A stretch of 63,346 nt of DNA, filler included, from Octopus bimaculoides (lineage: Eukaryota): the NCBI RefSeq assembly GCF_001194135.2. It is 10 parts of 9 records of this genome, joined end to end, with 100 filler letters (N's around TTAATTAATTAA, not from the genome) between each part and the next. Parts side by side here need not be neighbours in the genome. Positions count along the whole stretch, not along the records: positions 4,411 to 6,395 come from NW_026382658.1; 9 more parts are not named here. One strand, 5' to 3'. Shown here piece by piece: positions 1 through 6,395 of the stretch. The position numbers were made by a program, and so were the translations under genes. The notes beneath the pieces are model-generated. The model searched no databases. It had not been told where the DNA came from and was given only the letters and a program-made list of their open reading frames with translations. Positions within the stretch are counted from its first letter, which is position 1. The number at the start of each line of letters is the position of its first letter.

Positions 1-232
1 TATTATTTCAGCCTGGCTGTGTTTTTAGACAGTTGAAAAGAATACTTTTAATATAAAAAAAAAAAAGAAAAGAAAAGAAATTAAATGATAGCATTGTAGT
101 TGCGGGTGGGGCCCCTTAGTCTCCTGGCAACCAATATTTTAGACCCAGTCTGCCAATGCATTCAGCCATGTCTGCGCCTATAAAGCCAAGCATGCGCCTA
201 AATATAAATTGAAAAAAAAAAAAAAAATTAAT

Positions 233-4410: not shown

Positions 4411-4542
4411 GGGCGAATAAATGAATGAGTGAAAGATGAATGACCCCCGGCCAGATATCGGCACTCGAGTAACTTAGCAGTGTAATAAACGACGCAGATA
4501 TGATAGCAATCTGTGTCAAAAATCAGTAAATGTTTTCAGTGT

Positions 4543-4584
<42 letters not shown>

Positions 4585-4615
4585 TTATTACTACCACCAC
4601 CACCAACACCACCAC

Positions 4616-6395
4616 CGGGCGTACGTTCAGGCAAAAGCTACGAACGATCGTCCGTAGCCTTTAGATCGAACGGGCGTAGGATCTAGTTCAAAACGGGGGC
4701 GCCAGTATTTTCTTAACGAAACACTTTGAAACTTGGGACACTGGTAGAATGTGTCATATAAAACATCTTTTTCTCTTAGTCTTCTTAAGAAAAATTATTA
4801 TATTGCAACNNNNNNNNNNTGTTAACGAAATTATATTAAAAATAGAACGAAGGAAAACGAACACACGTGTGTTGCCTCTCTGCAAAATGTCAGAAGTAAT
4901 GGAGATTAAATACGCTTTACACTGCTTAAACTGCCAAAGGAACCGCTTAAACTGCCAAAGGAGTAACCGTAAACAGCTGAATACTTGTCAGTGATTGGTT
5001 GAAATTATACAAATAAGACAATTTTTTACATGAAATAACTTCGAATACAAAAAATTTTTTCTATTCTATAACACAAAATAGATAAGTATACGAAGTTTGA
5101 AAGTCTTTCGGTACCAANNNNNNNNNNCTATAACACAAAATAGATAAGTATACGAAGTTTGAAAGTCTTTCGGTACCAAAAACACTACATAAAACATAAA
5201 TGAAAACTGGTGCCCCCGTTTTGAACTAGATTCCGGGCGTACGTTCAGACAAAAGCTACGAACGATCGTCCGTAGCCTTTAGATCGATCGGGCGTACGTT
5301 CAGGCAAAAGCTACGGACGATCGTCCGTAGCCTTTAGATCGAACGGGCATACGTTCAGGCAAAAGCTACGAACGATCGTCCGTAGCCTTTAGATCGAACG
5401 GGCGTACGTTCAGGCAAAAGCTACGAACGATCGTCCGTAGCATTTTAGATCGAACGGGCGTACGTTCAGTCAAAAGCAACTGACGCACGTCCGTAGCAGT
5501 TCGATCGAACCGCCGTACGTTCGGGCAAAAGCTACGAACGATAGTCCGTAGCATTTTAGATCGAATGGACGTACGTTCGGGCAAAAGCTACGAACGATCG
5601 TCCGTAGCATTTTAGATCGAACGGAAGTACGTTCGGGCAAAAGCTACGGACGATCGTCCGCAGACCTTAGATCGAACGGGCGTACGTTCAGGCAAAAGCT
5701 ACGGACGATCGTCCGTAGCCCTTAGATCGAACGGGTGCACGTTCAGGCAAAAGCTACGGACGATCGTCCGTAGCCCTTAGATCGAACTAGCGTACATTCA
5801 GTCAAAGGCAACGGACGCACGTCCGTAGCTTTTAGATCTTGCGGACGTACGTTCAGTCAAAAGCAACGGACGCACGTCCGTAGCTTTTAGATCGAACGGA
5901 CGTACGTTCAGTCAAAAGCAACTGACGCACGCCCGTAGCAGTTCGTTCGAACGGGCGTACGTTCAGTCAAAAGCAAGAGACTCACGTCCGTAGCTTTTAG
6001 ATCGAACGGGCGTAAGTTCAGTTAAAAGCAACGGACGCACATCCGTAGCTTTTAGATCGAACCACCGTACGTTCGGGCAAAAGCTACGAACGATAGTCCG
6101 TAGTATTTTAGATCGAATGGACGTAGGTTCGGGCAAAAGCTTCGAACGATCGTTCGTAGCATTTTAGATCGAACGGACGTACGTTCGGGCAAAAGCTACG
6201 GACGATCGTCCGTAGCCCTTAGATCGAACGGGCGTACGTTCAGGCAAAAGCTACGGACAATCGTCCGTAGCTCTTAGATCGAACGGGCGTACGTTCATTC
6301 AAAAGCAACGGACGCACGTCCGTAGCTTTTAGATCGAACGGGCGAACGTTCAGTCAAAAGCAACGGACGCACGTCCGTAGCTTTTAGATCGAACG
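4616..6395. repeat. 55/56-bp palindromic tandem array (22 monomers visible, runs into a gap)
   Basis: Monomer GGGCGTACGTTCAGGCAAAAGCTACGGACGATCGTCCGTAGCCTTTAGATCGAAC. One copy at 4616-4670 and 21 copies at 5235-6394. Confidence 0.97.
4679..5233. mobile_element. Non-autonomous TIR DNA transposon inserted in the 55-bp array
   Basis: 28-bp TIRs GGATCTAGTTCAAAACGGGGGCGCCAGT and (revcomp) GAATCTAGTTCAAAACGGGGGCACCAGT, 2 mismatches. Flanked by duplicated CGGGCGTA at 4671-4678 and 5234-5241. Confidence 0.9.

What the first reader, a model, noticed from the sequence alone, without database searches (positions are those of the whole stretch)
4616..6395. CpG-dense 55-bp tandem array built on a 30-bp palindrome
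Seen: each monomer has the core AAAAGCTACGGACG-AT-CGTCCGTAGCTTTT. The 22-mer GCTACGGACGATCGTCCGTAGC is a perfect palindrome. A second short stem, CGAACG..CGTTC, spans the monomer junction. There are about 8 CpG per 55 bp against a much less CpG-rich background. Variant B monomers change the centre (CA loop) but keep the stem, suggesting the hairpin is preserved. Established: ~30-bp palindromes inside short direct repeats are the layout of baculovirus homologous regions (origins/enhancers), and palindromic arrays also occur inside some DNA transposons. Inference: this could be a structured satellite, a protein-binding or cruciform array, or a remnant of a viral or transposon replication element rather than a neutral minisatellite.
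Basis: partly seen in the sequence, partly recalled or inferred. Interest (0 to 1): 0.78.

Follow-up and report, generated by a model that had tools for sequence, protein, structure and literature searches.

The report
Palindrome-bearing 55-bp satellite, transposon-interrupted
This is an ordinary non-coding tandem repeat of 55-bp units whose founder unit happened to be palindromic and CpG-rich; the copies are losing the palindrome at random, and a small transposon has landed inside the array.

Summary
The 55/56-bp tandem array is real: TRF gives period 55, 21 copies and 87% matches. It is not continuous over 4616-6395. One unit sits at 4616-4678 and 21 units at 5234-6395. Between them lies a 555-bp non-coding element with ~30-nt terminal inverted repeats and an 8-bp target-site duplication.

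Both assembly gaps lie inside that insert. The gap at 5118-5127 is flanked by identical 52-mers, so it is an unmerged contig overlap. The gap at 4810-4819 is unresolved.

The dyad symmetry is real: 82% of cells pair, against 22-43% when the partners are slid. Of 29 variants in paired columns, 27 break pairing. The covariation score equals the shuffled value, and paired and unpaired columns vary equally.

CpG density is confirmed (7.5 per 55 bp, observed/expected 2.0), with no deamination-type decay. No relatives turned up in viral, prokaryotic, metagenome, protein or literature searches.

Best reading: a satellite-type array evolving by unequal exchange and block duplication, its palindrome inherited from the founder unit. 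The adjoining microsatellite leaves open an origin as the central-repeat module of a Helentron-type element. A viral origin has no support. Interest is low.

The parts
4543..4616 (.). Compound microsatellite, (CTA)17 at 4543-4594 then (ACC)8 at 4593-4616, directly abutting the first array unit
   Evidence: TRF rows; sequence
4616..4678 (+). First array unit (4616-4670, A-type) plus the first 8 bases of the next unit (4671-4678). Those 8 bases are the left copy of the target-site duplication CGGGCGTA.
   Evidence: families D2 and D3. The unit is 96-98% identical to units m01-m04.
4679..5233 (.). Non-coding element with terminal inverted repeats (MITE-like) inserted in the array. The repeats are at 4679-4709 and 5203-5233. 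The inner 29 nt are 93% complementary; over 31 nt there are 3 mismatches. It holds both assembly gaps and an internal 21-bp tandem duplication at 4921-4962.
   Evidence: I5; alignment; I1, D4. No ORF family hits. No similarity to the array unit.
4810..4819 (.). Assembly gap 1, inside the insert. The flanks do not overlap, so continuity is unresolved.
5066..5179 (.). Assembly gap 2 (5118-5127) flanked by identical 52-mers at 5066-5117 and 5128-5179. This is most likely an unmerged contig overlap, so one 52-mer copy and the Ns are artefacts.
   Evidence: longest suffix equal to prefix is 52; D1, 100%
5234..5241 (.). Right copy of the 8-bp target-site duplication CGGGCGTA, which is also the start of unit m01
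   Evidence: D3
5234..6395 (+). Main array of 21 units of 55/56 bp. It is cut by the piece's edge inside a unit. Over all 22 units (this block plus the solo unit at 4616-4670) there are 14 A-type and 8 B-type units, in runs.
5310..5331 (.). One of only four perfect copies of the 22-mer palindrome. The others are at 5698-5719, 5753-5774 and 6195-6216.
5510..5731 (+). Four-unit block m06-m09, duplicated 552 bp downstream
   Evidence: 94.5-96.4% identity to m16-m19, against an array mean of 84.8%
6062..6283 (+). Four-unit block m16-m19, the copy of m06-m09

Best explanation
This is a non-coding satellite-type (minisatellite) tandem array in a eukaryotic genome. Its 55-bp founder unit consisted almost wholly of two dyads: a ~30-nt palindrome and an 18-nt junction stem-loop. 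It also carried 8 CpG.

The array grew, and is being reshuffled, by unequal exchange or replication slippage and by duplication of multi-unit blocks (inferred). The palindrome and the CpG richness are inherited from the founder and multiplied by copying. They are not detectably maintained by selection for pairing, because the copies are losing the symmetry at the same rate as they change elsewhere (shown). After the array existed, a small element with terminal inverted repeats inserted into it and duplicated 8 bp of a unit (shown).

In single-stranded or supercoiled DNA, the better-preserved units can extrude hairpins, and neighbouring units can pair with each other (shown by prediction). This may itself favour slippage and copy-number change (inferred).
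For: - Tandem structure: period 55, 21 copies, 87% matches; alignment of 22 units.
- Non-coding: the period is not a multiple of 3. Only short ORFs are present, with no Pfam match and no homologue among 5.8 billion protein clusters. There are no tRNAs.
- Neutral decay of the dyad:
  - The covariation score is 0.026, against 0.027 for shuffles. One pair changed on both sides, against a shuffled mean of 1.0.
  - 27 of 29 variants in paired columns break pairing, and there is a single compensated pair in one unit.
  - The minor-letter fraction is 0.100 in paired columns and 0.108 in unpaired ones.
  - Only the perfect units fold notably better than shuffles: z = -3.4, against -1.3 to -2.0 for the others.
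- Array dynamics:
  - Adjacent units are more alike than units 2-7 apart (0.872 against 0.805-0.837; the offset-10 block duplication reaches 0.874).
  - Block m06-m09 reappears as m16-m19 at 94.5-96.4% identity.
  - A and B types have 4 fixed differences and sit in runs (5 switches, permutation p = 0.012).
- Insertion:
  - The terminal inverted repeats are 29 nt long and 93% complementary.
  - The 8-bp duplication CGGGCGTA is present on both sides, and the array is in phase on both sides.
- CpG: 7.5 per 55 bp, observed/expected 2.04. CpG columns are no more variable than the others (0.066 against 0.117, permutation p = 0.13), and only 8 of 21 changes there are of the deamination type.
- Eukaryotic context and no relatives elsewhere.
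Against: - Only one locus of about 2 kb could be seen, and the piece ends inside the array. Copy number, other loci, the right flank and chromosomal position are all unknown.
- The units are related by descent, so 20 units hold few independent events. Weak selection on pairing cannot be excluded.
- The one compensated pair and the slightly lower variation at CpG columns and in the junction stem (0.075) lean the other way, though neither is significant.
- The assembly looks like a short-read de Bruijn assembly (the 52-base overlap at a gap). The order and number of near-identical units may therefore be partly collapsed or chimeric.
- The microsatellite that abuts the array is the layout of the repeat module of a mobile-element family. 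That would make 'plain satellite' an incomplete description.
Confidence: 0.65

Rival explanations
1. The array is the central tandem-repeat module of a non-autonomous Helentron-type rolling-circle element (HINE / DINE-1 / pearl / DTC84 kind), here expanded into a satellite-like array. In those elements a left module ends in a microsatellite, followed by tandem repeats, which can carry a palindrome, and then a right module with a 3' palindrome.
For: - A compound microsatellite, (CTA)17(ACC)8, directly abuts the first unit.
- This is the layout described for Cg_HINE in oyster (PMC7492417), DINE-1/HINE (PMC4067079) and DTC84 (PMC3879986).
- DTC84 core repeats each end in a palindrome.
- Such central repeats are reported also to occur as classical satellites.
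- A weak hairpin of 9 bp with 1 mismatch lies at 4491-4499 and 4509-4517, upstream of the microsatellite.
Against: - There are at least 22 units here, against up to about 5 core repeats in DTC84. The units are 55 bp, against about 156-170 bp there.
- No inverted repeat was found in the 132-bp left flank with a 6-base seed, and its fold is no better than shuffles (z = -0.5). By my estimate the weak hairpin is expected by chance about 0.15 times.
- The microsatellite motifs there are mostly 4-nt (GTCY and similar), whereas here they are 3-nt.
- The right module cannot be seen, and no other copies are available.
Confidence: 0.2
2. The array is functional chromatin. It could be a centromere-type or other satellite whose dyad symmetries adopt non-B (cruciform) DNA, or an array of binding sites for a dimeric sequence-specific protein that recognises the palindrome.
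For: - Dyad symmetry covers about 48 of 55 bases.
- Perfect units fold at -13.1 kcal/mol as DNA, z = -3.4.
- Neighbouring units form hairpins of about 30 bp, z = -10 to -12.
- Dyad symmetries predicted to form non-B DNA are reported as a common property of centromeric satellites (PMC5889037).
- The CpGs are retained.
Against: - There is no excess conservation of the palindrome over the rest of the unit and no covariation.
- Only 4 of 22 units keep a perfect core.
- A transposon sits in the array.
- Nothing about location, abundance or occupancy can be tested here.
- Non-B formation needs only approximate symmetry, so this reading is hard to separate from the neutral one using sequence alone.
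Confidence: 0.1
3. The array is a remnant of a viral replication or enhancer element of the baculovirus homologous-region (hr) kind, or part of an endogenous large DNA virus or Polinton.
For: The resemblance is in layout only: an imperfect palindrome of about 24-30 bp inside a direct repeat of about 55-70 bp. For example, the hrs of SpltNPVII consist of 3-8 copies of a 64-bp unit, each holding a 24-bp imperfect palindrome (PMC4535591).
Against: - There are 0 exact-pattern matches in 2.9 million viral contigs for two unit patterns and for the insert's terminal repeat.
- There are at least 22 units, against 3-8 per hr in the virus read.
- The 2-kb piece holds no ORF with a family match.
- The flanks are a microsatellite and a small transposon.
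- Exact-pattern scans would miss diverged relatives, so this evidence is weak rather than absolute.
Confidence: 0.02
4. The array is a microRNA or hairpin-RNA gene cluster. Rfam's MIR5304 and other miRNA models hit the array.
For: There are sub-threshold Rfam matches, the best being 42 bits with E = 1.6e-7. Predicted RNA hairpins reach -49 to -54 kcal/mol.
Against: - All matches are far below the gathering scores (42 against 75).
- The alignment shows that the score comes from the long stem formed by two neighbouring palindromes, with matches on both strands.
- No expression data are available.
Confidence: 0.03

Closest known systems
Satellite or minisatellite DNAs with internal dyad symmetry (survey in PMC5889037)
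   Same: Head-to-tail non-coding units, variant types in runs, block (higher-order) duplication, and short-to-medium dyad symmetries able to form hairpins or cruciforms
   Different: The dyad here is unusually long: up to 22 nt perfect, with about 48 of 55 bases lying in two dyads. The survey's abstract speaks of dyads under 10 bp. Abundance and chromosomal location are unknown. No sequence relative was found in any collection or paper searched.
Central tandem repeats of Helentron-associated elements (Cg_HINE in oyster PMC7492417; DINE-1/HINE PMC4067079; DTC84 and pearl elements PMC3879986)
   Same: A microsatellite directly next to one end of a tandem-repeat block, and repeats that carry a palindrome (DTC84). 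Such repeats are known to expand into satellites.
   Different: The units are much shorter (55 bp against about 156-170 bp) and far more numerous (at least 22 against up to about 5). The microsatellite motifs are 3-nt, not 4-nt. The subterminal inverted repeat plus IR was not found in the visible left flank, and the right module cannot be seen.
Baculovirus homologous regions (hrs), e.g. PMC4535591
   Same: An imperfect palindrome embedded in a direct repeat of about 55-70 bp
   Different: No sequence match to viral contigs, no viral genes in the piece, many more units, a cellular-looking context, and a CGATCG centre. Binding by a viral transactivator cannot be tested.
MITEs with 8-bp target-site duplications (for the insert at 4679-5233)
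   Same: Terminal inverted repeats of about 30 nt, an 8-bp duplication, about 0.5 kb long, A+T-rich and non-coding
   Different: The termini as read do not begin with the motif that, from my own knowledge, is usual for hAT elements. No other copies are available, so both the superfamily and the repetitiveness are unproven.

Membership tests
Satellite/minisatellite tandem array | Head-to-tail units of constant period | tested here: met
   TRF gives period 55, 21.0 copies, 87% matches and 0% indels. Unit spacing is 55 or 56.
Satellite/minisatellite tandem array | Non-coding | tested here: met
   The period is not a multiple of 3. ORFs are 81 aa or shorter and have no Pfam hit. There is no protein homologue.
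Satellite/minisatellite tandem array | Variation pattern of unequal exchange: neighbours more alike, variant runs, block duplications | tested here: met
Satellite/minisatellite tandem array | Long arrays or many loci in the genome (satellite in the strict sense) | not testable with these tools
   The source genome is not available, and the piece ends inside the array.
Structured (selected) hairpin array | Substitutions respect pairing: compensatory changes exceed controls, or paired columns are more conserved | tested here: not met
   Covariation equals the shuffled value, 27 of 29 variants break pairs, and variation is 0.100 in paired columns against 0.108 in unpaired ones.
Baculovirus hr | Imperfect palindrome of about 24-30 bp inside a direct repeat of about 60-70 bp | tested here: met
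   This is met in layout only. The comparison is with PMC4535591.
Baculovirus hr | A few (3-8) units per region, with several regions lying between viral genes | tested here: not met
   There are at least 22 units, and the piece holds no genes with family matches. The flanks are a microsatellite and a transposon. The wider neighbourhood cannot be seen.
Baculovirus hr | Sequence relatives in viral genomes | tested here: not met
   There are 0 matches in the viral contigs. These are exact-pattern scans, so distant relatives would be missed.
Baculovirus hr | Bound by the viral transactivator IE-1; acts as an origin or enhancer | not testable with these tools
   -
Helentron-associated element (HINE/DINE-1/pearl/DTC84) repeat module | Microsatellite adjoining the tandem-repeat block | tested here: met
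   (CTA)17(ACC)8 at 4543-4616 abuts the unit at 4616. The feature is as described.
Helentron-associated element (HINE/DINE-1/pearl/DTC84) repeat module | Left module with a 5' subterminal inverted repeat of 11-13 bp plus a nearby complementary IR | tested here: inconclusive
   No inverted repeat was found with a 6-base seed. There is only a weak hairpin of 9 bp with 1 mismatch at 4491-4517, and the fold z-score is -0.5. Just 132 bp of the flank are visible.
Helentron-associated element (HINE/DINE-1/pearl/DTC84) repeat module | Right module with a subterminal inverted repeat and a 3' palindrome; no target duplication; insertion at TT | not testable with these tools
   The piece ends inside the array at 6395.
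Helentron-associated element (HINE/DINE-1/pearl/DTC84) repeat module | Short central array (a few units) | tested here: not met
   There are at least 22 units. Expanded satellite forms are reported, however.
MITE with 8-bp target duplication (the insert) | Terminal inverted repeats plus a target-site duplication; small and non-coding | tested here: met
MITE with 8-bp target duplication (the insert) | Many dispersed copies; superfamily-typical terminal motif | not testable with these tools
   No source genome is available. The terminal repeat is absent from the viral contigs. The terminal motif judgement rests on my own knowledge only.
Rfam MIR5304 / miRNA precursors | Score at or above the family's gathering threshold | tested here: not met
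   42 bits against a gathering score of 75. The match is driven by the stem.

The most novel reading that the evidence does not exclude
The 55-bp double-dyad unit is the expanded central-repeat module of a rolling-circle (Helentron-type) element in a lineage whose repeats are barely described. Alternatively, it is that lineage's centromere-type satellite, and the long palindromes act through non-B DNA rather than through conserved sequence. On either version the microsatellite junction, and the shared CGGGCGTA register of the array start and the transposon's target site, would mark a preferred break point in the loop of the junction dyad.
Probability: 0.15. Interest if true: 0.45.

Novelty: new member of a known kind. 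Interest (0 to 1): 0.2.

Why it matters
Taken as it stands, this is a routine annotation: a previously undescribed satellite family plus a nested small transposon. It is useful for repeat masking, and it also flags an assembly artefact (duplicated 52-mers around a false gap).

It is a clean worked example that a striking consensus palindrome need not be under selection. The palindrome exists in full only when different unit types are combined, and the individual copies erode it at random.

The locus would gain interest only if genome-wide data linked the unit to a mobile-element cassette or to centromeres.

Tried and rejected
- Relatives elsewhere:
  - Two unit patterns and the insert's terminal repeat gave 0 hits in the viral contigs.
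  - The unit pattern gave 0 hits in the GTDB genomes.
  - The unit pattern gave 2 hits in the metagenome contigs. On reading, both are single 23-nt chance matches in G+C-rich bacterial contigs, with no array and no extension of the match.
- Spurious-ORF trick: I searched a 72-aa ORF translated from the array against 5.8 billion protein clusters, hoping to catch the same satellite in other assemblies. Nothing was found.
- Pfam on three ORFs gave nothing below E = 0.15.
- There are no tRNA or SINE-like genes.
- Rfam gave only sub-threshold miRNA-model hits, explained by pairing between neighbouring units.
- Literature:
  - No paper holds the core strings.
  - The three literature searches on cephalopod and mollusc repeats turned up no matching family; only three of the papers were opened and read.
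- Does the unit derive from the insert or from the left flank?
  - No similarity beyond shuffles was found when the pieces were compared one at a time.
  - One 11-nt match to the right terminal repeat reached 2 of 300 shuffles. That is not significant over 8 tests.
  - An earlier run, compared the insert pieces strung together in memory. I repeated it piecewise and rely only.
- CpG decay by methylation: not seen.
- First attempt at pair counting: failed because the structure string had the wrong length. It was redone.
Full report
**1. Gaps first**

The piece 4411-6395 holds two runs of 10 N.

- Gap 5118-5127: the 52 bases before it (5066-5117) are identical to the 52 bases after it (5128-5179).
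  - This is what two contigs that overlap by a fixed word length look like when a scaffolder joins them with Ns instead of merging them.
  - I infer that the DNA is continuous there, and that one 52-mer and the Ns are artefacts. A real 62-bp tandem duplication cannot be excluded from sequence alone.
- Gap 4810-4819: the flanks share no overlap, so continuity is unknown.
- Both gaps lie in the inserted element described below and neither lies in the array. The array's period and phase are therefore unaffected. Nothing here is coding, so 'in frame' does not arise.

**2. What is there**

Tandem Repeats Finder reports a 55-bp period, 21.0 copies, 87% matches, no indels and score 1509 at 5234-6395. 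It also reports (CTA)17 at 4543-4594 and (ACC)8 at 4593-4616.

Anchoring on a conserved 8-mer gives unit spacings of 55 or 56. One further complete unit lies at 4616-4670, right after the microsatellite.

Between 4679 and 5233 the sequence is A+T-rich (24-35% G+C, against 52% in the array) and unrelated to the unit. It is bounded by inverted repeats at 4681-4709 and 5203-5231, which are 29 nt long and 93% complementary. These extend to 31 nt with 3 mismatches when the two outermost bases are included.

The 8 bases CGGGCGTA stand immediately outside the insert on both sides, at 4671-4678 and 5234-5241. They are the first 8 bases of a unit.
- The left piece ends with a full unit plus these 8 bases.
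- The right piece begins with the same 8 bases and continues as a unit.
- The array is therefore in phase on both sides, with one 8-bp target duplication.

The units on either side of the insert are of the same subtype and 96% identical.

**3. The palindrome**

The 30-mer occurs in none.

The units fall into two types, 14 A and 8 B, with four fixed differences.
- A-type units keep the 22-mer core, 7 of them with a G-to-A change that breaks one pair. They have lost the A4/T4 extension.
- B-type units keep A4/T4 but have an A.A mismatch at the third stem position and a non-palindromic centre.

The full 30-nt palindrome therefore exists only when the types are combined. No unit has all 15 pairs.

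The symmetry itself is not chance. On the 20-unit alignment A1, 81.7% of cells form a pair in the proposed two-helix structure, against 21.6-43.0% when the partners are slid by 1-3 columns. The junction dyad (GAACG, a 6-nt loop, CGTTC) is present in most units. It gains a sixth pair in 6 units.

**4. Is the pairing preserved?**

It is not, within the power of the data.
- The covariation score is 0.026, against a shuffled mean of 0.027 (228 of 500 shuffles are at least as high).
- One pair has a change on both sides, against a shuffled mean of 1.0.
- Paired columns hold 29 distinct variants at positions where the majority pair is Watson-Crick. Of these, 27 leave the pair broken. The other two are the two sides of one compensated pair in a single unit, 6110-6165.
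- The minor-letter fraction is 0.102 in the 22-mer core, 0.131 in the A4/T4 extension, 0.075 in the junction stem and 0.108 in unpaired columns. Paired columns overall give 0.100.
- As single-stranded DNA, a perfect unit folds at -13.1 kcal/mol (z = -3.4). Five other units give z between -1.25 and -2.0.

One caveat applies. The units share descent, so the number of independent events is small and weak constraint cannot be excluded.

**5. CpG**

The array has 158 CpG in 1162 bases: 7.5 per 55 bp, observed/expected 2.04. TpG+CpA stands at 0.48 of expectation.

The left flank and the insert have 1.6-1.7 CpG per 55 bp, but their observed/expected is 0.74 and 1.15. The background is thus not CpG-depleted for its own composition. 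The contrast reflects a founder unit with 8 CpG that was copied.

Within the array, CpG columns are not more variable than the others (0.066 against 0.117; permutation p = 0.13). Only 8 of 21 changes there are C-to-T or G-to-A. There is no sign of methylation-driven decay. I infer that the array is either unmethylated in the germ line or young.

**6. Array dynamics**

- Mean identity is 0.872 between neighbours. It falls to 0.805-0.837 at offsets 2-7 and rises again to 0.874 at offset 10.
- Units m06-m09 (5510-5731) match m16-m19 (6062-6283) at 94.5-96.4%, against an array mean of 84.8%. This is a duplication of a four-unit block 552 bp away.
- The types sit in runs (AAAAABAAAAABBBBBAAAABB; 5 switches, permutation p = 0.012).

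This is the usual signature of unequal exchange and segmental duplication in satellites.

**7. Coding and RNA checks**

- ORFs are 81 aa or shorter. Three tested ORFs have no Pfam match below E = 0.15.
- A 72-aa array ORF has no homologue in the large protein collection.
- There are no tRNAs.
- Rfam gives only sub-threshold hits to miRNA-precursor models, the best being MIR5304 at 42 bits against a gathering score of 75.
  - The alignment shows that the score comes from a stem of about 30 bp formed by two neighbouring quasi-palindromes.
  - These stems fold at -49 to -54 kcal/mol as RNA, z = -10 to -12.
  - This follows automatically from palindromes in tandem and is not evidence of a gene.

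**8. Relatives elsewhere**

- Exact-pattern scans found nothing in 2.9 million viral contigs and nothing in the prokaryotic genomes.
- The metagenome scan found two single 23-nt matches in G+C-rich bacterial contigs. Neither has an array or any extension of the match, so they are chance hits.
- No paper in the library holds the core strings.
- The source organism is unknown to me.

**9. Comparison with known kinds**

(a) Dyad-symmetric satellites are well known (PMC5889037). This is one, with an unusually long dyad.

(b) Helentron-associated elements (Cg_HINE, DINE-1, pearl, DTC84) have a microsatellite next to a block of central tandem repeats. DTC84 repeats each end in a palindrome, and such repeats can expand into satellites.
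- The (CTA)17(ACC)8 tract abutting the first unit matches that layout.
- The visible 132-bp left flank shows no convincing subterminal repeat plus IR.
- The unit size, copy number and microsatellite motif length all differ.
- The right module lies beyond the piece.
- I keep this as the main rival, at about 0.2. It concerns origin and is not exclusive of the best explanation.

(c) Baculovirus hrs share only the layout. Copy number, context and the viral scans speak against this reading.

(d) The insert has the hallmarks of a MITE with an 8-bp duplication. From textbook knowledge that length fits hAT, and also the P and Merlin superfamilies. The termini do not show the usual hAT start, so I leave the superfamily open.

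**10. Verdict**

It is a new member of a known kind and of low interest.

Noticed in passing
window 4679-5233: A non-coding element of about 0.5 kb with ~30-nt terminal inverted repeats and an 8-bp target-site duplication (CGGGCGTA) is nested in the array. It is A+T-rich and unrelated to the unit.
   Followed up: yes
window 5066-5179: The 10-N gap is flanked by identical 52-mers. This looks like an unmerged fixed-length contig overlap, so the scaffold probably carries 62 spurious positions here.
   Followed up: yes
window 4543-4616: A compound microsatellite, (CTA)17 then (ACC)8, abuts the first array unit with no spacer. This is the same layout as the microsatellite plus central repeats of Helentron-associated elements.
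   Followed up: partly
window 4616 and 4671-4678 / 5234-5241: The array begins at the microsatellite in the same unit register (CGGGCGTA) that the nested element duplicated as its target site. That stretch is the loop of the junction dyad. This could be coincidence or a preferred break point.
   Followed up: no
window 4491-4517: A weak hairpin (9-bp arms with 1 mismatch, 9-nt spacer) lies in the left flank about 25 bp before the microsatellite. By my estimate it is expected by chance about 0.15 times in this flank.
   Followed up: partly
window 4921-4962: There is a 21-bp tandem duplication (95% identical) inside the nested element.
   Followed up: no
window 5802-5888, 5967-6053, 6299-6387: Sub-threshold Rfam MIR5304 matches occur on both strands. 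They are caused by neighbouring quasi-palindromes pairing into hairpins of about 30 bp (RNA fold z = -10 to -12).
   Followed up: yes
window 5510-5731 and 6062-6283: A four-unit block is duplicated 552 bp apart at 94.5-96.4% identity, a partial higher-order repeat.
   Followed up: yes
L001 about 1-140 (minus strand) and L002 about 375-520: The two bacterial metagenome contigs that hold the chance 23-nt match share a near-identical stretch of about 130 bp with each other, while the rest of each contig differs. This may be a bacterial mobile or repeated segment and is unrelated to the finding.
   Followed up: no
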